Source: Salpingoeca rosetta (lineage: Eukaryota > Protista > Choanoflagellata). Taken from it: a DNA stretch of 64,000 bases. Position 1 is the first letter of the stretch, and the number at the start of each line of letters is the position of its first letter. The notes beneath the pieces are model-generated. The model was not told the DNA's origin, searched no databases, and saw only the letters and a list, made by a program, of their open reading frames with translations. Shown here piece by piece: positions 8,031 to 49,632 of the stretch. A program made the translations under genes and the position numbers. The stretch covers positions 1,357,917-1,421,916 of the forward strand of contig JAWQFM010000004.1 of assembly GCA_033442325.1 (NCBI GenBank), given 5' to 3'.

Positions 8031-10920
<2,890 letters not shown>

Positions 10921-11078
10921 GCGAGCAGGGAAGCGACCGCACATGGATAAAATAAGTCTATCCACACGACGCACACATGCACAAAGGAGACGTGGCTTCT
11001 TCTTCCATTGACTTTGTTGTTTGCTGCCCAAAAGCGCGAAAACCTTCGAACAAACTTTGCGGACAGCAACGAAGGAAG

Positions 11079-12359
11079 ATGAACAACCCTGGCCTGACGT
11101 TGGTGGTGGTGGCAAGTTGCTCGCTGTTGTTGACGATGATGCCGTTCATCGGCGTTGTTGGAGGGGTGACGCTGAAGGAGGACGGTGCGGGCGCGTTTCA
11201 CATCAACACTAGCGATCCAATGAGCCAGCCCGTGTTCGTGAACGGGATGCAAGTGGATGGGCTGTTCGAGACAATGGACACGCTGTTGCGGGCATTCTCA
11301 ACGCAGCAGAGTACCATCGACGCGCAGCAGAGCACGATCGATGCGCTGCAGAGCACGGCCTTCGCGCAGCAAAGCGCAATTGATGGACTGTGTCGTCGGG
11401 TGGAGCCGAGTGCAAAGACCTTTGGGCAACTTGGCTCGCAGGCTTCAAAATGGGCAGATGGTGTGCTTGGGGGCAATGGTCTGATATACGCCGCGCCGCA
11501 CTTTGCATCCTCCGTGCTTATCATTGATCCCAGCACCAACACCGTCGACACAACCACAATCTCCGGACTTGGGGCAGACGATCGCAAGTGGGCTGGTGGG
11601 GTACTAGCTGACAACGGGCTCGTTTACATGTTTGCTGCTTCCAGGCCAACAATGCTCATCATCGACCCAGACACCAACACCATTGACATCACAAGCATTC
11701 ACTCGCTTGGTTCCGGGCAAAACAAGTGGTTTGGTGGCGTGGTCGCCAGCAACGGCGTCATCTTTGGCATCCCATTGTCTGCGACCTCTGTTCTCATCAT
11801 CGATCCAGAGACCAACACAGCCGACATCACCTCCATGGCTGGTCTCGCTTCCGACTATGACAAGTGGTTCGGCGGTGTGCTGGCAGACAACGGCCTTATC
11901 TACTGCACACCAATCCGTGCAGCCTCTGTCCTCATCATCAATCCACAGTCCATGACCATGGACCTCACCACCATCAGTGGCCTCGGCACGAGCGCCAAGT
12001 GGCTTGCCGGCGTGCTTGCAGGCAACGGACTCATTTACACGATCCCATTTCTTTCGGCATCGACGCTTGTTATTGATCCAGCCACCAACACGACCAGCCA
12101 GGTTCGTGCTGTTTCTCAGTCCTCCATCAGGGACTGGGCGGACGGTGTGCTGGCACCCAACGGCAACGTCGTTGGCATTCCTTTCGACTCCTCATCCGTC
12201 TTCATCATTGATCCAACGACCAACACGATTGATACAACGAGTATCAACGACCTTGGCGGGACAGGCAAATGGTATGGCGCGGTTCTCGGTCCAAACGGCC
12301 TCATCTACGGCATTCCACACTATGCGGAGTCCGTCCTCGTCATCGATCCGGGATGCTGA
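11079..12359 (+). CDS. Intronless predicted secreted protein: signal peptide + short conserved module + Gln-rich coiled coil + 7 x ~46-aa beta-propeller repeats (paralog A)
   Basis: Uninterrupted 426-aa ORF from ATG 11079. Hydrophobic N-terminus, AFHINTSDPMSQPVFVNG module, QQSTIDA heptads, seven KWxGGVLAxNGLIYxxPxxAxSVLIIDP repeats, ends DPGC*. Confidence 0.9.
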   Translation: MNNPGLTLVVVASCSLLLTMMPFIGVVGGVTLKEDGAGAFHINTSDPMSQPVFVNGMQVDGLFETMDTLLRAFSTQQSTIDAQQSTIDALQSTAFAQQSAIDGLCRRVEPSAKTFGQLGSQASKWADGVLGGNGLIYAAPHFASSVLIIDPSTNTVDTTTISGLGADDRKWAGGVLADNGLVYMFAASRPTMLIIDPDTNTIDITSIHSLGSGQNKWFGGVVASNGVIFGIPLSATSVLIIDPETNTADITSMAGLASDYDKWFGGVLADNGLIYCTPIRAASVLIINPQSMTMDLTTISGLGTSAKWLAGVLAGNGLIYTIPFLSASTLVIDPATNTTSQVRAVSQSSIRDWADGVLAPNGNVVGIPFDSSSVFIIDPTTNTIDTTSINDLGGTGKWYGAVLGPNGLIYGIPHYAESVLVIDPGC

Positions 12360-12400
12360 TGTGTGTGTGTGTGCGTGTTTTTGCGTGTATAGGTGTATGG

Positions 12401-12453
<53 letters not shown>

Positions 12454-12697
12454 CTTCTTGGTTGTCCTTGCCCAATCTGTCATTCATCTGATTCCTTAAC
12501 CCTCTCTTAGCGTCAACTTTCGTTCTTTCAACTCTGTGACTGCATCCTGTACGCCTACCACTGTTCATTGGTCCTTGACTTTCACCACCAACTGTCATGT
12601 CACAACAACAACGACAATAGAAGGCGGACACCACAACCAAACCAACCACAAGCCCCCCCCCCCCATGTCGACGTAAACGTCTTCCCGAACGCACGCG

Positions 12698-12794
<97 letters not shown>

Positions 12795-12808
12795 CAAAAC
12801 AAAGCACA

Positions 12809-12843
<35 letters not shown>

Positions 12844-12882
12844 CACACACAACAAAACAAAGCACAACACACACACACACAT

Positions 12883-14139
12883 TCACTGCTCCTGGTCCGC
12901 GTGTGCTGCTGGAGCAAGGGAGAAGGTGTCCTGGCTCACGTGGCGGTTCACCACCCACGTGTATGCGCTGTCAAACGCCGCCGGAAACGCGGTCCGGGCG
13001 TCCACAGCCAGCCCCGCGTAAAGGGGGAAGTACGCTTCCCGCATGCGGCGGTACGCAGCCCACAATACGGACGCGGCACACTCGCGCGATGACGCCAGGA
13101 GGTAGGAGGGCATGCTCAGCTCCATGTGCCGGTGGCGGTCGTCCGCGTGCACAAACTTGCGCTGCACTTCCGTCTTCACGCCGCCCGGGCAGTGCACGGT
13201 GACGCTGACGCCGTGCGCGGCCAGCTCCGGTCGCAGCGTGTCGAAGAACCCGTGCAGGGCGTGCTTGGTGGCTGCGTACCCGGCCTGGAAGGGCGCTGGT
13301 ATCCGCGCGTAGAACGAGCTCACAACCACCACCCGCCCGCGCGTGCGCTTGAGGTGCGGCAGTGCGGCGTGCGTCGCCCGCACGTACCCCCAGTAGTTGA
13401 CCTCCATCAGCCAATGCAGCGCGTCTGTGTTCGGAAGGTCTTCCAGCCGCGACCACGTGCCGGCCGTTCCCGCGTTCAAGATGAGCGTGTCAATGCGGCC
13501 GAGCCGGGCAGCGGCCGTCTCGACGAGCGACATCGCGTCCTCGGGTCGCGTCGCGTCGTACCGCACAATGTGCACCGATGTAGCGCCAGCTCGGCGGCAC
13601 TGCTCTGCAACCTGCTCCAGCCTCTCCATCCGCCGCGCCGCCAGCAGCAGCGCAGCGCCGGCTTCCGCAGCCAACAGCGCCACGTCCTTCCCGATGCCTG
13701 AGGATGCTCCCGTGATCACCACCGCCTGGTTCAGCATGCCCGGCACGACGCCCGCTTTAGTCCAGGCAAGAGCGTCATTGCCGCTCGCGGCGTCGTCAAA
13801 GGCGGAGATGTCGTGGCGTGCTGCAAGCAGCGCCTCCTGCCAGCTCACGTCCACGGAGCGCTGCTGCTGTGCCTGCTGATGCGGTGGGGTGGGGACGTGT
13901 TCCGGGTTGTAGACCTGTAAGCCAGCACGGGCAGCCGCGAGGCACAGCTCCACGACAACGAACCCGGCGTGGTAGGATGCGTCGATGACCAGCGCCGCGG
14001 CCTTGCCCAGGTGAACGGGGATCAGCAGCACGGCTTGCAGAGTTGCGGCCGTGTCCAGTGGGGCCACCTTGTACCCCAGCGTCAGCAGCACCGCCAACAC
14101 CCCCACGCCAACACCCACTCGCCACCAACTCACCACCAT
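12883..14139 (-). CDS. Intronless membrane-anchored short-chain dehydrogenase/reductase (11beta-HSD1/DHRS7-like)
   Basis: 418-aa ORF with VVITGASSGIG (TGxxxGxG), ILNAG, VNYWG, catalytic YAATK and a hydrophobic N-terminus. Confidence 0.9.
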   Translation of the reverse strand: MVVSWWRVGVGVGVLAVLLTLGYKVAPLDTAATLQAVLLIPVHLGKAAALVIDASYHAGFVVVELCLAAARAGLQVYNPEHVPTPPHQQAQQQRSVDVSWQEALLAARHDISAFDDAASGNDALAWTKAGVVPGMLNQAVVITGASSGIGKDVALLAAEAGAALLLAARRMERLEQVAEQCRRAGATSVHIVRYDATRPEDAMSLVETAAARLGRIDTLILNAGTAGTWSRLEDLPNTDALHWLMEVNYWGYVRATHAALPHLKRTRGRVVVVSSFYARIPAPFQAGYAATKHALHGFFDTLRPELAAHGVSVTVHCPGGVKTEVQRKFVHADDRHRHMELSMPSYLLASSRECAASVLWAAYRRMREAYFPLYAGLAVDARTAFPAAFDSAYTWVVNRHVSQDTFSLAPAAHADQEQ

Positions 14140-43303: not shown

Positions 43304-43913
43304 GGTCCCGGTCAGGCAGGCGAACAGTGGTGCGACGTGGTGCGACGTGTCAGCAGCAGTAGAACGGGCGTGTGTTGTGTCGCTCGCTGGCTGTTGTGGT
43401 GGCTGTTGTATTGGGTTTTGCGCGCGAACACGACTCAGCAGGCGACACGACGACATGCGGAAATATTGTAAGATGTGGGGAGGATGAGGATGAGATCGAG
43501 ATCGAGAACATGCGGCCGCAGTTGTCTGCCACCTGCTCTCTGTTTAGACCTGCGCCTCGTCACCCGTTCACTGCGCGAGATGCAAGGAGATCAAATAACT
43601 GAGGGGGGTGTCGCTCTCTGTCGCTGTGCATTACTGAAGTGCAGTTGTGTTGTTGTACTTGAAGACTTGTTCTACTTGTTGTGACAATGGGGAAGTTGAA
43701 GTTGGGGCGGTTGAGGTCAAGGAGGAAACAAAGAAACAAGGAGCGAAGTCAGGGACGCAAAGGACAATAATGAAAGGTAGAGGAACTGAGGGAGCAGTGG
43801 TTGAGTTGACTTGAGGAACACAACATGAAAGAAGAGAGCAACAACGACGCAAATGATAAAAGAAGTGGGTGAACAAGACTACAAGAGACGACAAGAGTAA
43901 ACATGCAGACGTC

Positions 43914-45200
43914 TCAACATCCCGGATCGATGACGAGAACAGACTCTGAGTAAAATGGGATGGCGTAGACGAGGCCATTGTCAGTGAGCACGCCGCCGTA
44001 CCACTTGGCATCCCCGTTAAGGTTTTGAATTGTCGTCGTGTCGGTGGTGTTTGTGGTTGGATTGAAGATGAAGACTGATGGTGATTTGTATGGGATGCCG
44101 ATGATGTTGCCGTTGGGTGCAAGCACGCCGCCGACCCACTTTCCTGAACCCGTGGAATCGGGCACGGCGAGGGTGTCTGCAGTGTTGGTGGTCGGGTTGA
44201 GGACGAGGGTCGTCGCACTAAAGTATGGGATGCCATAGATAAGGCCGTTGCCTGCAAGCACACCACCATACCACTTGGCGCTTGTATCGAAGCCGCTGAT
44301 GGTGGTGAGGTCCATGGTCATGGACTCTGGATTGATGATGAGGACGGAAGGGGCCGTCGTGGGAATACAGTAGATGAGGCCATTGTCTGCTTGCACACCG
44401 CCAAACCACTTGTCACCCTGGCTGGACAGCCCTGACAGCGTGGTGACGCCGGCTGTATTGGTCTCTGGATCAATGCTCAGCACAGAGGTGGCGAAGTAGG
44501 GTATGCCGAAGATGAGGCCGTTGCTGGCTGCCACGCCACTAAACCACTTGCGTTCACCGTCACCAAGTGAATCGATGCTCGAGGTGTCTGCGGTGTTGGT
44601 GTCTGGGTCGATGATGAGCATCGTCTCCCTATTTGAAGGAAGCATGTAGATGAGGCCGTTGTGTGCCAACACGGCACCAGCCCACTTGTAGCTGTCTGTG
44701 CCAAGTCCGGAGATTGTGGTTGTGTCAACGGTGTTGGTGCTGGGGTCGATGATGAGCACGGACGGGGAGTTGAACGGCGCCGCGTAGATCAGGCCGTTGT
44801 TCGCCAGCACACCTCCAAGCCACTTCACACTCAGTGAGTCAAGCTGCCCAAACGTCGTGGCACTTGGGGTGCACACTTCGCCACGGACACGGTCGATGGT
44901 GTTCTGCTGCGCCTCAATCGCCCTCTGCTGCGCGGAGACAGTAATCTGTAGCGCAGCATTGATGCTCTGCTGCGCCGACACGGTGCTCATCAGCGTGCTG
45001 AGCGTCTCGTGCACATTCACGCCGTTCACAAACACTGGCTGGCTCATTGGATCGCTGGTGTTGATGTGAAACGCGCCCGCATCATCCTCCATCAGCGTCA
45101 CCTCTCCACTGGTGGTGAACGGCATCATCGCCAGCAACACGAAAAGCTGCAGCATCACGTGTGCCTGCAGGCCCCCCATCGCTGTCCTTATCAGCGCCAT
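43914..45200 (-). CDS. Intronless predicted secreted coiled-coil + 7-bladed beta-propeller protein (paralog B)
   Basis: 428-aa ORF with the same architecture and repeat order as 11079..12359; ends DPGC*. Confidence 0.9.
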   Translation of the reverse strand: MALIRTAMGGLQAHVMLQLFVLLAMMPFTTSGEVTLMEDDAGAFHINTSDPMSQPVFVNGVNVHETLSTLMSTVSAQQSINAALQITVSAQQRAIEAQQNTIDRVRGEVCTPSATTFGQLDSLSVKWLGGVLANNGLIYAAPFNSPSVLIIDPSTNTVDTTTISGLGTDSYKWAGAVLAHNGLIYMLPSNRETMLIIDPDTNTADTSSIDSLGDGERKWFSGVAASNGLIFGIPYFATSVLSIDPETNTAGVTTLSGLSSQGDKWFGGVQADNGLIYCIPTTAPSVLIINPESMTMDLTTISGFDTSAKWYGGVLAGNGLIYGIPYFSATTLVLNPTTNTADTLAVPDSTGSGKWVGGVLAPNGNIIGIPYKSPSVFIFNPTTNTTDTTTIQNLNGDAKWYGGVLTDNGLVYAIPFYSESVLVIDPGC

Positions 45201-45517
45201 CTTGTTCTTCCTTGTGGACAGGTGGATGCTGTCCTGGCCTGAGGTGAGTGAGACACAGGATTGAAAGATTGGTCTTCTTCTTTTTGTTGTTGGAAGGGAA
45301 GAAAAGGACCGAAATCACAACACAGAAACACGCTTCACAAGTGTGTTGAGTGTGTGAATGAGTGAGTATGGTTGTCCGGTTGCGTGTTGAGACGAGGTTG
45401 ACTGTGCTTGTGCGAGTGTGAGTGCATTGCTGGCATTGAGCACTCACAGGCACAGCGTGTGCTTGGTGACGATGGCGGTGACGTTGTCCACCTTTGTGAA
45501 CGCTTTGAACGCGACTA

Positions 45518-45573
<56 letters not shown>

Positions 45574-46057
45574 TTGTTTGTGCGGGCGAAGAATCTAAGA
45601 AACGAACGTGCGACTCAGGCGACTGTAGGAGGACTGTCCCGCCCCTTGTTCTCGCTCCCTGAGGGCCATGAAGATCTTGAAGATTGCATCGGTCAACTGT
45701 CGTGTCGTGCTTTCGCTGTCAAGCAAGCGAGGCGCTGCTCGTGCTGCTGTCCCCGTGTTCAATCGGATCAAGAAGAGGAGAACAGTGGACGGGATGGAGC
45801 AAAGCAGCAAGAGGAAACAGGCCAGAACAGAGAAACAGGATGGCACTCATTGGGAGAGGATGAGGTCAGGGAATCCTGAGAGAGAAGCAACGCGGGCTCG
45901 TGGCGACAGCGACACAAGACAAGGAGAAGGAGAGAAAGGGGATGAGGAAAGGAAAGAAAGGGTTGAGAAGGACTGAAGGAGAGGGGTGCACAGTCTGATC
46001 CAACATACACACACACATACATACACACGCACGCACGTATGCGCGCGCGCGCACACA

Positions 46058-47341
46058 TCAGCATCCCGGGTCAATGACGAGAACAGACTCAGAGGAAGAC
46101 GGAATGCCGTAGATGAGGCCGTTTGGACCGAGCACGCCATCGAACCACTTGTTGTCGCCGGCAAGACCGCTGATGGTTGTTGTATCAGTGACGTTTGTTG
46201 TTGGATCGATGATGAGAACTGAGTGTGATTTGTATGGGATGCCGATGATGTTGCCGTTGGGTGCAAGCACGCCGCCGACCCACTTTCCAGAGCTTGTTTG
46301 CTCGGCCACGACGAGCTCGTCAGTGGCGTTCGTGGCTGGATCGATGACGAGTGCGGTTGCCGATAGCAATGGGATGGTGTAGATGAGCCCGTTGCTGGCA
46401 AGCACGCCACCATACCACTTGGCGTTACTGTCCAGGCCGCTGATGGTGGTGACGTCCATCGTCAGGGACTCGGGATTGATGATGAGGATCGAAGAAGTCG
46501 CACGTGGGATGCAGTAGATGAGGCCGTTGTCTGCTTGCACACCACCGTACCACTTATATTCTTGACTCAACACGCCAGACAGCGTGGTGAGGTCGGCTGT
46601 GTCGGTCTCAGGGTCGATGATCAGCACGGAGGTTGCAGAAGCTGGGATGCCGAAGACGAGGCCGTTGCTAGCCACAACACCACTGTACCACTTGTTGATA
46701 CCAGAGCCGAGCGAATCGATACTTGATGTGTCGACGGTGTTGGTGTCGGGGTCGATGATGAGCATTGTCTCCCTGTGCGAAGGAAACATGTAAATGAGCC
46801 CGTTGTGTGCCAGTACAGCGCCGGCCCATTTGAAGTTGTCGGTTCCCATCCCGGAGATTGTGGTCGTGTCAATGCTATTGGTGCTGGGGTCGATAATGAG
46901 GACAGAAGGGGAGTTGTGCGGGGCGGCATAGACCAAGCCGTTGTTTGTCAGCACCCCGCCAATCCACTTGTACGCAGTTGAGCCGAGCTGGCCAAACGTC
47001 CTTTCATGAACCCTGTGACAAAACGCAGCGTTCAGGGTTTGCTGAGCATCGATTGCGCTCTGCTGTGCATCGATCGTGCTTTGCTGAGCAGCATTGATGC
47101 TCTGCTGTGCCGAAACGGTGCTCATCAGCGTGCTGAGCGTCTCGTGCACGTTCATGCCGTTCACAAACACGGGCTGGCTCATTGGATCGCTCGTGTTGAT
47201 GTGAAACGCGCCCGCATAATCCTCCACCATCGTCACCTCTCCCATAGTGGTAAACGGCATCGAACAGACTGCCACCACCAGCAGCACGGACACCAGCATC
47301 ACACGTGCCTGCAGGCATCCCATCGTTCTCTTTCTCATCAT
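46058..47341 (-). CDS. Intronless predicted secreted coiled-coil + 7-bladed beta-propeller protein (paralog C, tandem with B)
   Basis: 427-aa ORF. Shares HETLSTLMSTVSAQQSINAA and KWVGGVLAPNGNIIGIPYKS exactly with B; ends DPGC*. Confidence 0.9.
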   Translation of the reverse strand: MMRKRTMGCLQARVMLVSVLLVVAVCSMPFTTMGEVTMVEDYAGAFHINTSDPMSQPVFVNGMNVHETLSTLMSTVSAQQSINAAQQSTIDAQQSAIDAQQTLNAAFCHRVHERTFGQLGSTAYKWIGGVLTNNGLVYAAPHNSPSVLIIDPSTNSIDTTTISGMGTDNFKWAGAVLAHNGLIYMFPSHRETMLIIDPDTNTVDTSSIDSLGSGINKWYSGVVASNGLVFGIPASATSVLIIDPETDTADLTTLSGVLSQEYKWYGGVQADNGLIYCIPRATSSILIINPESLTMDVTTISGLDSNAKWYGGVLASNGLIYTIPLLSATALVIDPATNATDELVVAEQTSSGKWVGGVLAPNGNIIGIPYKSHSVLIIDPTTNVTDTTTISGLAGDNKWFDGVLGPNGLIYGIPSSSESVLVIDPGC

Positions 47342-48095
47342 CGTACTCCAAGTTCAAGAAGAGAAGACGTGAAGACGAGCAGAAGAAGAAGGAGAACAGG
47401 AGAACAAGAGAAGTAGGAGTTAAGTGTGCCTTCCTCCTTCAGTCCTTCCTCGTTCGCGTGTCTGTTCGCAGGACAGGCGCAGCTCCAAGAGAAGACGAAG
47501 ACAGGATTGGTTTGTTGTTTGTTTGTGGCGTTTTGGCTGGTTGTGGTTGTGGACGATTGTTGGGAATCATGCATTGGATTTCCAGCCACACACAAGCAAG
47601 TTCACTGTTGTTTGTTGTGTTGTTGTGGAAGGCAGCACGTTGAAACGCATCCATCCCTCAGCCTTCCTTCAACAGCTCATCATTGGACCAACAAGGACAG
47701 AGCACACACCACACGATGTCGAAGTTAACGGCATGAGCTCATCTTGAGGCTTGTTCTGATTACGACCTGTATCTCGCTTCCTCCTCCCTTCTCCACACGT
47801 CTATCTGTGCGTGTCAAAACACCAACACCAACCACATGCCTGCCATTCTTCTTCATACTGTTGACTGTGCGTTCCGACAATGCAAATGTCCAAGGCAGGG
47901 ATGCCAGCATCAAAGGGCCCACTCAATACACAGCAACGAAGAAGACAAAGAACACCCACCAACGGAACAGGAACAGGGTGGGTATTGGAATAACGCTCAG
48001 CAACAAGCAAGAAGAAATGACGCGTTTGTAGATGTAACCAGAGAGATACGAGGTGTCCCGAGGACAGGACACACACACACACACACACCTCCCGC

Positions 48096-49124
48096 CTACT
48101 GAGCGTAGTACTGGAGCACGTGCTGTGCACACGTGTCAATGTCGCTGCGGGTGACGTAGGCCTGGGCGGAGAGGCGCAGCCACGCCTTACCATCCACCAT
48201 CTGCACTGCCACGGCGGTGTTGTGCTGTTCCATCATGTGCGCGTACAGGTTGGCGGCCTTGTCCGCGTCGTCGCTCGGCAGCCGCACCGTGAACATGCAC
48301 GGCTGCATGTCGGCAGGGCACGCGGCCTCTGTTCCAAACAGCTCCACCAGGCGCTCCCGCCCCCATTGCGCAAGGTCCAGGTTGCGTTGCATGAGGTCGC
48401 CGCCGCCGAGCCGCGTGTGGAAGGCAATGCCATCGGAGATGCAGCACATGGCCGTGTAGTCGCGCGTGCCCGTGTACACGTACTGGCGAGCGGTCGTGCC
48501 GTGCGCTTCACCCTGCGTGCCGTCGTCGGCGTCGTCTTGGTACAGGTGCCACTCGCTGGACACCACCGTCGGGTAGACCTGGTAGCCCGGAGCGAGGCAG
48601 AGCACGGCAGTGCCCTTGGGGCAGAACAGCCACTTGTGGCAGTTGCCAATGTACGCATCGACACCCGCGTCGAAGAGCGACGCCACGCTGATGGGGAGGT
48701 GGCCCGGCACGTGTGCGCCGTCAATCACCACGCGCGACACGCCGTGGTCCTTGGCGATGCGCGTCAGCTCGGCAACGGGCAGCGTCATGGCGGGGAAGCT
48801 GACAATGTGGGAGAAGATGGCCACCTTGAAGTGGCCCTTGGGGTGCTTCTGGAGCTCCTGCTCGACAGCGGACGTGACCTCCTCTTGTGCGGAGATGGGA
48901 AACGCCACGGGAACGCTGACGACGTCCCCGCACAGCCCTTGCCGCTGCAGCGCACGTGTGGTGTTCTTGACCATCGGGTATGCACAGCCGAGCAGCAGCA
49001 CGCGGTCGTCCTCGCGCACGCACGTTGCCCGCAGGCACGCGTTCACACCCGTGCTGCCGGCCGGGGGGGATGAAGTGACAACGGGGGAGGGGGGGGGTTG
49101 AGGTGGGACGGTGTGAGAGAGTGG

Positions 49125-49186
<62 letters not shown>

Positions 49187-49632
49187 GGCGGTGTTGGTGA
49201 GCAGCAAGCGAGCGAGCATTGCCCGAGCGGACTCTCTCCCCTGTGCTACCTTGTGTTTTCCACCAAGCAGACAGACTCCAGTGGTGCATCGAGGAAACTG
49301 GCGAGACCTGAACGGCTCTTGGCCACAATCTCCTGGTACTGGCCCTAAAAGGGTGGAGATGGGTGCGAGTATGAGTGAGTGTGTGTGAGTGGAAGGGAGG
49401 GGGAAATCGACAAGCAAACACACACACATGCACATGCAGACAGACACACACGTACACACACGTACGTACGTACCCGGAACCAGACATCGGGCCGTTGCTC
49501 TTGGCGTTGGAGGTACTTGACGTGCTTGTCCATGACCACCTTTGGCACTGTTCCAAACGAGCCATGGTTCAGGTTCACGTAGCCAGGCTCCAGCAGCAGT
49601 TCCGCTTTCACCTCCTCAGCAGTGGGCGCCAT
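48096..49632 (-). CDS. Class-V PLP-dependent enzyme (Egt2 hercynylcysteine sulfoxide lyase / L-cysteine desulfhydrase / isopenicillin-N epimerase-like), 3 exons
   Basis: YVNLNHGSFGTVP, VCLVENT, VVIDGAHVPG and YIGNCHKWLFCPKGTAVL (PLP lysine). Confidence 0.88.

What the first reader, a model, noticed from the sequence alone, without database searches (positions are those of the whole stretch)
43914..47341. Uncharacterised family of intronless, secreted coiled-coil + 7-bladed beta-propeller proteins (3 copies: 11079-12359, 43914-45200, 46058-47341)
Seen: three 426-428-aa ORFs with identical architecture: signal peptide, a near-invariant G(E/G)VTxxEDxAGAFHINTSDPMSQPVFVNG module, ~5 Gln-rich heptads (QQSTIDA), then seven KWxGGVLAxNGLIYxxPxxxxSVLIIDPxTNT repeats ending DPGC*. 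Two copies are in tandem and the third is ~32 kb away on the other strand. The repeats lack the kelch GG...Y...W spacing and I cannot assign them to a characterised eukaryotic family. Inference: a neck + oligomerising stalk + multivalent head layout parallels collectin/ficolin-like pattern-recognition proteins. This could be an expanding extracellular recognition or adhesion system (bacterial prey capture, ECM/theca, colony formation) in a close relative of animals.
Basis: partly seen in the sequence, partly recalled or inferred. Interest (0 to 1): 0.85.

Follow-up and report, generated by a model that had tools for sequence, protein, structure and literature searches.

The report
Secreted stalked beta-propeller gene family
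Three intact genes in this choanoflagellate (Salpingoeca rosetta) window belong to a family of about a hundred probably secreted proteins with a predicted three-stranded stalk and a seven-bladed wheel-shaped head, a head also found at the tips of phage and giant-virus fibres, which makes them likely surface-binding proteins, although nothing has been tested experimentally.

Summary
Three intact, intronless ORFs of 426-428 aa share one architecture: a hydrophobic leader, a near-invariant 30-residue beta module with a conserved N-glycosylation sequon, a Gln/Asn-cored helix, and a 7-bladed propeller ending in IDPGC.

- The family has at least ~98 loci in this 55-Mb S. rosetta genome, not three. 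38 of them lie on the window's 2.5-Mb contig.
- The repeats are assignable. They match Pfam DUF6923/DUF5074 and the YVTN repeat (TIGR02276).
- At 42-57% identity, the same propeller is the C-terminal head of phage tail-fibre-like proteins (Mtd_N fusion, collagen fusions), of a Hokovirus collagen-repeat protein, and of many Leptospiraceae proteins.

Supporting results:
- A three-copy model of the module plus stalk scores 0.81 against 0.01 for the best control.
- Paralogue variability concentrates in the D-A and B-C loops, which lie on one face by standard propeller topology.
- Pairwise omega is about 0.25, so the copies are under purifying selection.
- One paralogue (PTSG_02868) joins a TIR domain and a TM helix to the same propeller.

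Best reading: a diversified family of secreted trimeric binding proteins, collectin-like in layout only. Ligand and function are inferred. Expression of these three copies was not shown.

Other first readers of this scan noted the family elsewhere in this genome.

The parts
46058..47341 (-). Copy B, complete intronless CDS (427 aa + stop); the copy that was modelled
   Evidence: ORF. AF2 pLDDT 89.7. DUF6923 at 38.9 bits.
47243..47341 (-). Copy B residues 1-33: basic N-terminus (MMRKR) plus a hydrophobic core, read as a signal peptide ending just before GEVT
   Evidence: Highest 19-residue Kyte-Doolittle mean 2.26, and no other hydrophobic 19-mer after residue 40. The family-wide hydrophobic core has a median of 15 residues, and 66 of 81 copies have K/R before it. 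No SignalP run was available.
47150..47242 (-). Copy B residues 34-64: conserved beta-hairpin N-module GEVTMVEDYAGAFHINTSDPMSQPVFVNG with the N-T-S sequon at N49
   Evidence: Invariant among the window copies. Entropy is 1.09 bits against 2.0-2.2 for the leader and stalk. The sequon N-[TS]-[ST] is kept in 81 of 81 module-bearing copies. Strands 58-61 contact 46-49 of a neighbouring chain in the three-copy model.
47009..47149 (-). Copy B residues 65-111: helix forming a parallel in-register coiled coil (core L69 L72 V76 Q79 N83 Q86 I90 Q93 I97 Q100 N104 F107 V111), with Cys108 at its base
   Evidence: Helix 65-106. In-register contacts 72:72, 86:86, 90:90, 93:93 and 97:97, score 0.81 against 0.01 for the best control.
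46061..47008 (-). Copy B residues 112-427: seven-bladed propeller with C-terminal Cys427. Strand 112-116 is read as the fourth strand of blade 7.
   Evidence: DSSP strands. Foldseek TM 0.81-0.85 to Vgb lyase at 8-11% identity. 42% identity and rmsd 1.2 A to a Hokovirus collagen-repeat protein.
43914..45200 (-). Copy A, complete intronless CDS (428 aa + stop), in tandem with B. Leader 45108-45200, N-module 45015-45107, stalk 44862-45014, propeller 43917-44861.
   Evidence: DUF6923 at 29.8 bits. Mature Cys at 110, 278 and 428.
11079..12359 (+). Copy C, complete intronless CDS (426 aa + stop). Leader 11079-11159, N-module 11160-11252, stalk 11253-11402, propeller 11403-12356.
   Evidence: DUF5074 at 33.3 bits. 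TIGR02276 at 29.2 bits.
47342..47700 (-). Upstream region of copy B, shared at the DNA level with 17-19 of the 87 other fetched family loci; read as a conserved 5' UTR or promoter
   Evidence: blastn coverage of the window against the other loci. About 15 of the 29 closest paralogues share 400-500 bp upstream of the ATG. Copies A and C have unique flanks.

Best explanation
The three ORFs are working members of a large choanoflagellate gene family (at least ~98 loci here). It encodes extracellular, probably N-glycosylated, homo-oligomeric (most likely trimeric) 'stalked propeller' proteins.

Proposed mechanism:
- An N-terminal signal peptide sends the chain into the ER.
- The 30-residue beta-hairpin module intertwines with the same module of the sister chains.
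- The following helix zips into a parallel coiled coil with Gln/Asn core layers.
- The stalk then holds three seven-bladed propellers at its far end. Each propeller is closed by an N-terminal 'velcro' strand and probably by a Cys108-Cys427 disulfide.

The propeller is homologous to the distal head of phage tail-fibre proteins, giant-virus collagen-like fibre proteins and spirochaete surface proteins, so its job is binding. Paralogues keep the scaffold and the A-B and C-D loops and vary the D-A and B-C loops. By standard propeller topology these variable loops lie on one face. Each paralogue therefore offers a different binding surface, and oligomerisation adds avidity.

The likely role is recognition of, or adhesion to, particulate or polymeric ligands outside the cell, such as bacterial surfaces, prey or matrix. 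It is analogous in layout to collectins, ficolins and C1q-domain proteins, but not homologous to them.

Shown: ORFs, family size, fold, homology of the head, the pattern of variability, purifying selection.
Predicted: oligomer state.
Inferred: secretion, glycosylation, the disulfide, binding function, ligand class.
For: - ORFs and shared architecture.
- At least ~98 loci, and 81 of 85 extracted proteins carry the leader and the N-module.
- Confident 7-blade model.
- The three-copy model of residues 33-125 scores 0.81 (best of 3 controls 0.01; runs agree in at least 91% of contacts; partner pLDDT at least 84). The mark was reached by 21 of 30 proteins solved as pairs of one chain and by 0 of 23 solved as single chains. 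The calibration used two copies, not three.
- The N-glycosylation sequon is kept in 81 of 81 copies. Cys before blade 1 and a C-terminal Cys occur together in 69 of 81.
- Entropy is 2.18 bits in B-C loops and 2.44 in the last six D-A residues. It is 1.07 in A-B loops, 1.23 in C-D loops and 0.8-1.0 in strands A-C.
- Median omega is 0.25 for the propeller, 0.39 for the variable loops and 0.19 for the rest.
- Head homologues: 162 in viral contigs. They include Mtd_N + propeller beside a tape-measure gene, collagen G-X-Y + propeller, and fibres of about 2000 aa. Others are the Hokovirus collagen-repeat protein at 42% identity, phage Cr-LKS4 g13 with the head at its C-terminus beside a virion structural protein, and 172 prokaryotic relatives, mostly Leptospiraceae.
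- Beta-propeller 'lectins' on collagen shafts are described for eCIS tail fibres (PMC12923769). The Mtd N-terminal prism is described as the presumed point where the Mtd trimer attaches to the tail fibre (PMC10743442).
- The same propeller sits behind a TIR domain and a TM helix in PTSG_02868.
- The family is present in transcriptomes of Microstomoeca roanoka (full architecture), Hartaetosiga gracilis and Salpingoeca kvevrii.
Against: - No experimental datum exists for any member, and no ligand is known for any homologue of this propeller subfamily.
- No solved structure is related by sequence.
- Expression of the three window copies is not shown. Two RNA runs gave 57 and 47 reads, mostly partial and carrying paralogue-specific bases.
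- The signal peptide was judged by hydrophobicity only. A leader core of 15-17 residues could also be an uncleaved signal anchor.
- The oligomer test asked for three copies only, so a dimer or tetramer is not excluded.
- Pairwise omega stays below 1 even in the variable loops, so diversifying selection is not demonstrated.
- The closest solved fold is an enzyme, Vgb lyase.
Confidence: 0.6

Rival explanations
1. The proteins are extracellular or periplasm-like enzymes. The propeller is a catalytic domain of the Vgb-lyase or lactonase type that acts on a small molecule or polymer, and the stalk only oligomerises it.
For: The best PDB fold matches are streptogramin B lyase (TM 0.81-0.85). Several database relatives carry the automatic names 'streptogramin lyase' or 'SMP-30/gluconolactonase/LRE-like'.
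Against: - Identity to Vgb is 8-11%, which is fold level only.
- Pfam Vgb_lyase does not hit at E up to 1.
- The invariant columns of the 45-sequence alignment are hydrophobic or proline (W172, L194, P233, V239, L331, P369, P414). The near-invariant polar ones (D, N, K) sit at repeat-motif positions that recur in several blades (KW, NG, DPxTNTxD).
- The face where propeller enzymes usually hold their active site is the most variable one.
- Viral homologues are fibre tips.
Confidence: 0.1
2. They are structural or adhesive building blocks of the choanoflagellate's own extracellular matrix, theca or rosette matrix. They would be self-assembling cross-linkers rather than receptors for foreign ligands.
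For: The same secreted oligomeric multi-head layout suits cross-linking. S. rosetta builds a theca and a rosette ECM (general knowledge). The family is old and under purifying selection.
Against: About a hundred paralogues that differ mainly in one set of loops is more than a structural role would seem to need. The propeller also serves as the ectodomain of a TIR-TM protein. The homologues are fibre heads of viruses that bind foreign cells.
Confidence: 0.2
3. The hydrophobic N-terminus is an uncleaved signal anchor, so these are type II membrane proteins that display stalk and head on the cell surface as receptors rather than as soluble factors.
For: The hydrophobic core is 15-17 residues and is preceded by basic residues. 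Relatives in the genome are membrane-anchored type II proteins with the same head, for example PTSG_02868 with TIR + TM + propeller.
Against: A median core of 15 residues is short for a TM span. Small residues precede the conserved module (TTS|G, TTM|G, GVV|G), as at signal-peptidase sites. There is almost no cytoplasmic tail in most copies.
Confidence: 0.15
4. The copies are remnants of integrated giant-virus or phage DNA, or passengers of a mobile element, with no function for the host.
For: The head is shared with viruses at up to 57% identity. The genes have no introns. Subsets of paralogues share 0.4 to more than 1.5 kb of flanking DNA.
Against: - Omega is about 0.25 over 93 pairs, and there are almost no stops among ~98 loci.
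- The G+C of the genes (0.56-0.57) matches the flanks.
- A eukaryote-type leader and an N-module and stalk are found only in choanoflagellate-type proteins.
- Homologues are transcribed in three other choanoflagellates.
- No transposase or viral ORF appears in the shared flanks.
- Copies A and C have unique flanks.
Confidence: 0.04

Closest known systems
C-terminal propeller heads of phage tail-fibre or receptor-binding proteins and giant-virus collagen-like fibre proteins (IMG/VR contig with Mtd_N + propeller; Hokovirus HKV1 A0A1V0SG21; Cylindrospermopsis phage Cr-LKS4 g13)
   Same: The 7-blade propeller is homologous: 42-57% identity and the same 46-residue repeat KWxGGVLAPNGxIYxIPxxSxSVLIIDPxTNTxDTT. 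It sits at the C-terminal end of a trimer-forming shaft.
   Different: Viral and bacterial copies end in a ...Y[LF]NK[FYL] tail after the last blade and lack the two Cys. Choanoflagellate copies stop at IDPGC. The shafts differ: Mtd_N prism, collagen or long fibres against signal peptide + beta module + coiled coil. The N-module profile finds no viral or prokaryotic ORF in the fetched loci.
Leptospiraceae / Spirochaetota DUF6923 proteins ('putative Ig domain-containing protein', 'Vgb family protein')
   Same: The same propeller at 45-56% identity, present in several copies per genome.
   Different: They are bacterial lipoprotein-like proteins with Ig-like N-terminal parts and an FNKF-type tail. 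Their function is also unknown.
Collectins, ficolins and C1q-domain proteins (animal soluble pattern-recognition proteins)
   Same: The layout is alike: a secreted chain, an N-terminal oligomerising part, a trimeric stalk and globular C-terminal heads. Invertebrate C1qDC families also undergo large lineage-specific expansions (PMC6835236).
   Different: There is no homology. No collagen, C-type lectin, fibrinogen or C1q domain hits at E up to 1. The stalk is an alpha-helical coiled coil and the head is a propeller.
Virginiamycin B (streptogramin B) lyase Vgb, PDB 2z2n / 2qc5
   Same: It is the best solved fold match, also a seven-bladed propeller of about 300 residues (TM by target 0.81-0.85).
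   Different: Identity is 8-11%. There is no Pfam Vgb_lyase hit, no PDB sequence hit, and no blade-specific conserved polar residues.
Archaeal and bacterial YVTN beta-propeller surface proteins (TIGR02276; S-layer protein PDB 1l0q)
   Same: The repeat signature is recognised just above the cut-off (28.5 and 29.2 against 27.85 bits). 1l0q is among the Foldseek hits. These are cell-surface proteins.
   Different: The match is marginal and found in only two of the three copies. YVTN proteins lack the stalk and module.
PEGA domain (PF08308)
   Same: The N-module G-LHINTS-P--QPVFVNG aligns with the first hairpin of PEGA repeats (GTLHINSTPSGASVYLNG) in long surface proteins.
   Different: Only about 24 of the 70 PEGA positions are covered. 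Pfam PEGA does not hit the window proteins, and a helix follows the module instead of the rest of the sandwich.

Membership tests
Pfam DUF6923 / DUF5074 propeller repeats | Whole-protein score above Pfam's gathering cut-off | tested here: met
   DUF6923 scores 38.9 bits (copy B) and 29.8 bits (copy A) against a cut-off of 27. DUF5074 scores 33.3 bits (copy C) against 27.2.
YVTN beta-propeller repeat (TIGR02276) | Score above NCBIfam's cut-off of 27.85 bits | tested here: met
   28.5 bits (copy B) and 29.2 bits (copy C). Copy A has no hit at E up to 0.1. The match is marginal.
Kelch repeat proteins | Kelch_1 or Kelch_6 profile match above the cut-off | tested here: not met
   Kelch_1 gives E 0.26 and 11.3 bits against a cut-off of 20.1, in copy C only.
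Vgb (streptogramin B) lyase | Sequence membership (Pfam PF24684, or a PDB sequence match) | tested here: not met
   No PF24684 hit at E up to 1. A profile of the propeller finds no PDB sequence at E up to 0.01. The similarity is fold only, at 8-11% identity.
Vgb (streptogramin B) lyase | Conserved catalytic His/Glu and metal site on the top face | not testable with these tools
   Model coordinates and a residue-level superposition were not available. Indirectly, no blade-specific invariant polar residue is seen.
Collectin / ficolin | Collagen Gly-X-Y stalk plus a C-type lectin or fibrinogen-like head | tested here: not met
   No Collagen, Lectin_C or Fibrinogen_C match at E up to 1. The stalk is a helix and the head a propeller.
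Viral / bacterial fibre-head propeller (same domain family as the Hokovirus, phage and Leptospiraceae proteins) | Full-length alignment of all seven blades with significant sequence identity | tested here: met
   Identity is 45-57% over 308 residues in A3. tblastn E reaches 1e-93. Foldseek gives 42% identity and rmsd 1.2 A over 312 columns.
Viral / bacterial fibre-head propeller | C-terminal ...Y[LF]NK[FYL] tail after blade 7 | tested here: not met
   Most viral and prokaryotic ORFs end in YLNKF, YFNKF and the like. The window copies end in IDPGC.
Secreted trimeric coiled-coil protein | Self-association of the stalk as a parallel in-register bundle | tested here: inconclusive
   The prediction alone passes: score 0.81 against 0.01 for the best control, with the caveats given by the tool. 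The stoichiometry was imposed as three copies, and there is no experiment.
Secretory-pathway protein | Cleavable N-terminal signal peptide | tested here: inconclusive
   A hydrophobic core follows basic residues and is followed by small residues. No other TM-like segment is seen in copies A and B, and there is a conserved N-X-S/T sequon. No dedicated predictor was available.
PEGA domain (PF08308) | Pfam profile match over the roughly 70-residue domain | tested here: not met
   No PEGA hit at E up to 1. Only the first hairpin aligns with PEGA arrays.

The most novel reading that the evidence does not exclude
Choanoflagellates hold a diversified, germline-encoded repertoire of about a hundred soluble trimeric receptors. 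Their binding head was taken from, or shared with, virus or bacterial fibres. The repertoire would be used to recognise bacteria (prey, cues or pathogens) and would be coupled to membrane-bound TIR-TM-propeller relatives that signal. That would be a non-LRR, non-lectin-fold innate recognition system in the sister group of animals.
Probability: 0.2. Interest if true: 0.85.

Novelty: new variant of a known kind. Interest (0 to 1): 0.62.

Why it matters
S. rosetta is the main laboratory model for the unicellular relatives of animals. Its life history (rosette formation, mating, feeding) is governed by bacteria, yet few of the proteins it uses to sense bacterial surfaces are known.

A family of about 100 probably secreted, probably trimeric proteins fits that role as a candidate recognition or adhesion repertoire. 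The heads are homologous to viral receptor-binding fibre tips, they vary in the D-A and B-C loops, and one paralogue is fused to a TIR domain.

The family also offers a clear case of one binding domain shared among phages, giant viruses, spirochaetes and a eukaryote. In addition, this propeller subfamily (DUF6923/DUF5074) has no solved structure related by sequence, and I found no paper that describes its function.

If the family turns out to be merely structural matrix, the finding is still a sizeable unannotated part of the S. rosetta secretome. The exact window proteins are absent from the 15-billion-protein collection.

Tried and rejected
1. Homology of the N-module to the viral fibre motif (G-x-M-G-I-N/G-T-x-x-P...L-x-V-x-G in P0043 and L095). 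The N-module profile found no viral or prokaryotic ORF among 6887 sequences with E below 5, so this was rejected as untestable or unsupported.
2. Feature search of the ESM Atlas with residues 30-118: no usable hit.
3. PHROGs: no family for the window protein.
4. Literature. There were no papers for DUF6923 or for six PTSG ids of paralogues. Searches combining S. rosetta with propeller, secreted and expansion terms found nothing on this family.
5. Expression. The runs that hold the stretch look like DNA, with flat depth over intergenic DNA. The RNA runs gave too few specific reads to decide.
6. Positive selection. Pairwise NG86 on 93 pairs gives omega below 1 everywhere, and 4% of pairs exceed 1 in the variable loops. 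dS is 0.57 or more and partly saturated, so this is inconclusive. No codon site-model software was available.
7. Direction of transfer. In the tree of 110 propellers most choanoflagellate rows fall on one side and the viral and prokaryotic rows, intermixed, on the other. The deep branches are weak (SH-aLRT 0-82), so neither donor nor root can be named.
9. The first attempt at search for related loci in genome contigs with A2 failed for lack of a conserved stretch. It was repeated with A3.
10. The exact window proteins are not in the protein collection, so I cannot say how they are annotated.


Full report
**1. What is in the window**

The third frame stays open from an upstream ATG at 10977, but the hydrophobic leader starts at the 11079 Met. 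The copies are 74% and 65% identical to the first. The block from G32 to G60 (GEVTxxEDxAGAFHINTSDPMSQPVFVNG) is invariant apart from four positions, and all three end in VLVIDPGC. Database hits to paralogues are named Salpingoeca rosetta PTSG_xxxxx. The genome is 55.4 Mb in 68 contigs, and the window is C4:1357917-1421916.

**2. Fold**

An AlphaFold2 model of copy B, built on a 45-sequence alignment, is confident (mean pLDDT 89.7, pTM 0.76). It shows:
- a leader helix at 14-26;
- a beta hairpin at 36-50 with a short strand at 59-63;
- one continuous helix at 65-106;
- a strand at 112-116;
- seven blades beginning at residues 126, 172, 218, 264, 309, 354 and 399.

Blade 7 has only three listed strands. 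The mature protein has three Cys. One is just before that strand (C108), one is in blade 4, and one is the last residue (C427). C108 and C427 sit where the missing C-D loop of blade 7 would be, so a ring-closing disulfide is plausible. Across the family, both Cys are present together in 69 of 81 proteins. Most of the exceptions are truncated or have altered ends.

**3. The family is large**

A six-frame search of the whole genome gives 108 matches, about 98 distinct loci, nearly all near full length with no stop. The tool states this is a lower bound (251 first-look candidates, 98 scored). By my count from that table, 38 loci lie on the window's 2.52-Mb contig C4, 14 on C25 (1.07 Mb) and 7 on C35 (0.75 Mb).

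I fetched 90 loci and extracted 85 proteins.
- 81 have the hydrophobic leader followed by the N-module.
- In all 81 the module keeps an N-[TS]-[ST] sequon (NTS 66, NTT 12, NSS 3).
- The distance from the module to the first blade varies from 54 to 169 residues, so stalk length differs between paralogues.
- The four without the module include L039, where a TM helix and low-complexity linker precede the propeller, and L090, where an S/T/P-rich linker does.

The exact translations of the window ORFs are not in the 15-billion-protein collection, so their annotation status is unknown to me.

**4. Are the genes alive?**

Nei-Gojobori estimates on a codon alignment of 70 full-length paralogues gave 93 pairs with dS of 0.57-0.8. 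There are no younger pairs, so the expansion is not recent. Median omega is 0.25 for the propeller and 0.21-0.22 for the module and helix. This is clear purifying selection, so these are maintained protein-coding genes. The G+C content of the genes (0.56-0.57) matches that of the flanks.

**5. Where the paralogues differ**

The table gives mean column entropy over the 70 paralogues.

| Region | Entropy (bits) |
|---|---|
| B-C loops | 2.18 |
| Last six residues of the D-A loops (just before each KW) | 2.44 |
| A-B loops | 1.07 |
| C-D loops | 1.23 |
| Strands A-C | 0.8-1.0 |
| N-module | 1.09 |
| Leader, helix, linker | 2.0-2.2 |

In the standard propeller topology the D-A and B-C loops lie on one ('top') face, which is the usual ligand face. 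The scaffold and the opposite face are therefore kept, and one face is diversified. Omega in these loops is twice that of the rest (0.39 against 0.19) but remains below 1. Diversifying selection is thus suggested, not shown. Another first-reader note on this window (s1-436187) made the same point, and my computation agrees with it.

**6. Oligomer**

Three copies of residues 33-125 were folded together with controls.
- The score was 0.81 in all three runs, against 0.01 for the best of 3 controls.
- The runs agreed in at least 91% of contacts, and partner pLDDT was at least 84.
- The mark was reached by 21 of 30 proteins solved as pairs of one chain and by 0 of 23 solved as single chains. The calibration used two copies, so the counts hold only roughly here.
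- Contacts are in register and parallel (72:72, 86:86, 90:90, 93:93, 97:97).
- They define an a/d core of L69, L72, V76, Q79, N83, Q86, I90, Q93, I97, Q100, N104, F107 and V111.
- Strands 58-61 of one chain pair with 46-49 of the next, so the N-module forms an intertwined cap.

This supports self-association through the module and stalk. It does not fix the number of chains, because I imposed three.

**7. What the head is related to**

- *Profile matches.* Pfam recognises DUF6923 or DUF5074 above the cut-off. NCBIfam recognises the YVTN repeat just above the cut-off in two copies. Kelch is not met.
- *Solved structures.* No solved structure is related by sequence. By fold the nearest are Vgb lyase (TM 0.81-0.85 at 8-11% identity), sensor propellers of Bacteroides hybrid two-component systems, a YVTN S-layer protein and leptospiral Lp49.
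- *Viral relatives.* Sequence relatives of the propeller are abundant, with 162 in IMG/VR viral contigs. In a 36.6-kb phage contig the propeller follows an Mtd_N domain (E 6.7e-14) and lies next to the tape-measure gene. Mtd sits at the distal end of the Bordetella phage tail fibre, and the N-terminal prism is presumed to attach the Mtd trimer to the fibre protein (PMC10743442). In other viral contigs the propeller follows collagen Gly-X-Y repeats, tail-fibre-like repeats or fibres of about 2000 aa. A 110-kb contig with an intein-bearing ribonucleotide reductase has four tandem copies.
- *Named viruses.* The best hit among predicted viral structures is a 'collagen triple helix repeat' protein of Hokovirus HKV1, a giant virus, with 42% identity and rmsd 1.2 A over 312 columns. 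In the cultured Cylindrospermopsis phage Cr-LKS4 the domain ends a 1130-aa protein next to a virion structural protein.
- *Prokaryotes.* 172 relatives were found, overwhelmingly Leptospiraceae and other Spirochaetota, with several per genome.
- *Literature.* A catalogue of contractile-injection-system fibres describes 'beta-propeller lectins' on collagen-like shafts (PMC12923769). I did not test whether those are the same subfamily.
- *C-terminus.* Viral and prokaryotic copies end in a ...Y[LF]NK[FYL] tail that the choanoflagellate copies lack.

**8. What is specific to choanoflagellates**

A profile of the N-module finds only S. rosetta proteins, Microstomoeca roanoka P0030 and environmental proteins of the same architecture. 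It finds none of the viral or prokaryotic ORFs. One of the environmental proteins lies on Tara Oceans metagenome contigs.

Against 1.84 billion representatives the profile gives 68 hits.
- The single-stretch hits that I could check (P0003, P0005, P0014, P0016, P0018, P0020, P0030, P0036, P0038, P0044, P0046, P0064, P0067 and P0072) are S. rosetta proteins, M. roanoka P0030 or environmental proteins of the same architecture. The remaining single-stretch hits are mostly short and were not examined.
- Three of the multi-stretch hits (P0126, P0149 and P0160) are PEGA-domain arrays. In P0126, whose alignment I inspected, the module aligns with the first hairpin of each repeat.

This is a motif-level resemblance only, since Pfam PEGA does not hit the window proteins.

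Propeller-bearing proteins with other N-terminal parts occur in the transcriptomes of Hartaetosiga gracilis and Salpingoeca kvevrii. The family is therefore transcribed in other choanoflagellates and predates S. rosetta.

In a tree of 110 propellers the three window copies fall in an S. rosetta-only clade (SH-aLRT 97). Most choanoflagellate rows lie on one side, and the viral and prokaryotic rows, intermixed, lie on the other. The deep branches are weak, so neither the donor nor the direction of transfer can be named.

**9. Link to TIR**

PTSG_02868 (612 aa) has an N-terminal TIR_2 match (E 2.3e-5, 25.3 bits, just under the 28-bit cut-off), a TM helix and the same propeller at 75% identity to copy B. 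In the genome the TIR exon (29.3 bits in the six-frame search) lies about 650 bp upstream of that propeller ORF on the same strand.

Of 38 TIR_2 matches, about six lie within 10 kb of a family locus. My rough expectation is about 1.3, giving a Poisson tail of about 0.002, but this is not corrected for the clustering of either family. None lies in this window. An earlier follow-up in this scan (s1-431392) described a similar reversed-order TIR receptor with a propeller elsewhere in the genome. The PTSG_02868 layout that I checked is of the same kind.

**10. Expression**

The sequencing-run search found no holder on record as RNA. The runs that hold the stretch show flat depth over the intergenic DNA and look like DNA. 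Two RNA-seq runs of the species, each about 26% read, gave 57 and 47 reads on 4.3 kb. Most were partial, with paralogue-specific bases (T>A at 44118, 46262 and 46738) and loose ends. About 12-15 reads at 99% identity or more fall on 43932-44219, the 3' end of copy A, in the orientation expected for a minus-strand RNA in a stranded library. Paralogues are therefore transcribed, but expression of these three copies is at best a trace in those samples and is not shown.

**11. Duplication unit**

Copies A and C share nothing with other loci outside the CDS. Copy B shares about 350 bp upstream (47342-47700) with 17-19 loci. Among the 29 closest paralogues about 15 share 400-500 bp upstream, and about 7 share at least 1.5 kb on both sides, with no convincing ORF in it. 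Codons 1-60 keep 0.79-0.84 identity at synonymous third positions, against about 0.6 elsewhere. This points to gene conversion of the 5' end or to a constraint on the mRNA.

**12. Reading**

The evidence fits a family of secreted, glycosylated, oligomeric (probably trimeric) proteins. Each holds propeller heads of a type that viruses and bacteria use at fibre tips, and the paralogues differ mainly in the D-A and B-C loops. I take binding of extracellular ligands as the function (confidence about 0.6).
- A recognition or adhesion role towards bacteria or matrix is the likeliest use.
- An enzymatic role is unlikely (about 0.1).
- A purely structural matrix role (about 0.2) and a membrane-anchored variant (about 0.15) remain open.
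- Selfish viral remnants are very unlikely (about 0.04).

The collectin/ficolin comparison holds for the layout only. Membership is excluded.

**13. Novelty**

I found no paper on this family or on DUF6923. It is a new variant of a known kind: soluble oligomeric stalk-and-head binding proteins, and fibre-tip propellers. What is new is the cap and coiled-coil stalk found only in choanoflagellate-type proteins, the Cys pair replacing the viral tail, the roughly hundred-fold expansion in a eukaryote, and the TIR-linked membrane relative.

**14. Operators' limits**

Read laying was given 4301 letters.

Noticed in passing
window 47162-47341, 45021-45200 and 11079-11258 (codons 1-60 of the three copies); also L001-L026: Synonymous third positions are much more alike in the first 60 codons (0.79-0.84) than in the rest of the CDS (about 0.6). 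In the window pairs, dS of the N-module is 0.18-0.30 against 0.8-1.2 for the propeller. This points to gene conversion of the 5' end or to a constraint on the mRNA.
   Followed up: partly
window 47342-47700; L002, L007, L009, L011, L013, L014, L016 flanks: About 15 close paralogues share 400-500 bp upstream of the ATG. About 7 share at least 1.5 kb on both sides, with no convincing ORF. The duplication unit is larger than the gene for a subfamily, and its limits were not reached.
   Followed up: partly
G000:C4:1718159-1720098 (L039; PTSG_02868, P0001): The layout is reversed-order and receptor-like: a TIR exon, a TM helix, a Gly/Pro-rich linker, then the same propeller at 75% identity to copy B. 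About six of 38 TIR_2 matches in the genome lie within 10 kb of a family locus.
   Followed up: partly
L093:5440-10534 (IMG/VR contig of 110,927 bp): Four tandem 372-379 aa propeller genes lie beside a ribonucleotide reductase interrupted by an intein with a LAGLIDADG endonuclease, and beside a eukaryote-like Ser/Thr kinase. This is probably a large virus of a eukaryote or a jumbo phage.
   Followed up: no
P0126, P0149, P0160: The choanoflagellate N-module aligns with the first hairpin of PEGA-domain repeats in long bacterial surface proteins (GTLHINSTPSGASVYLNG). Whether this reflects common origin or convergence is open.
   Followed up: partly
window about 10350-10700, 12400-12950, 43400-43460, 45850-46000: Long (TG)n/(CA)n microsatellites and a poly-A/T-rich tract flank all three copies. 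They show up as CVCVCV... and NNNN.../TTTT... ORF translations.
   Followed up: no
L014 (C4:1470184-1471434) and L058 (C12:113245-114135): These are the only two near-full-length family loci with an in-frame stop (one TAG, one TGA). They are probable pseudogenes among ~98 loci. (A third stop lies in a short split match at C23:1181063-1181434.)
   Followed up: no
P0116 / P0121 (722 aa; contigs up to 324 kb, JGI name 'eukaryotic-like serine/threonine-protein kinase'): An N-terminal protein kinase domain is fused to the same propeller. This is another case of the head joined to a signalling domain. The organism is unknown.
   Followed up: no
window 12883-14139(-) and 48096-49565(-): The neighbouring ORFs look like ordinary host genes. 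From the translations alone, one resembles a short-chain dehydrogenase and the other a PLP-dependent aminotransferase or desulfurase. Neither was run against Pfam.
   Followed up: no
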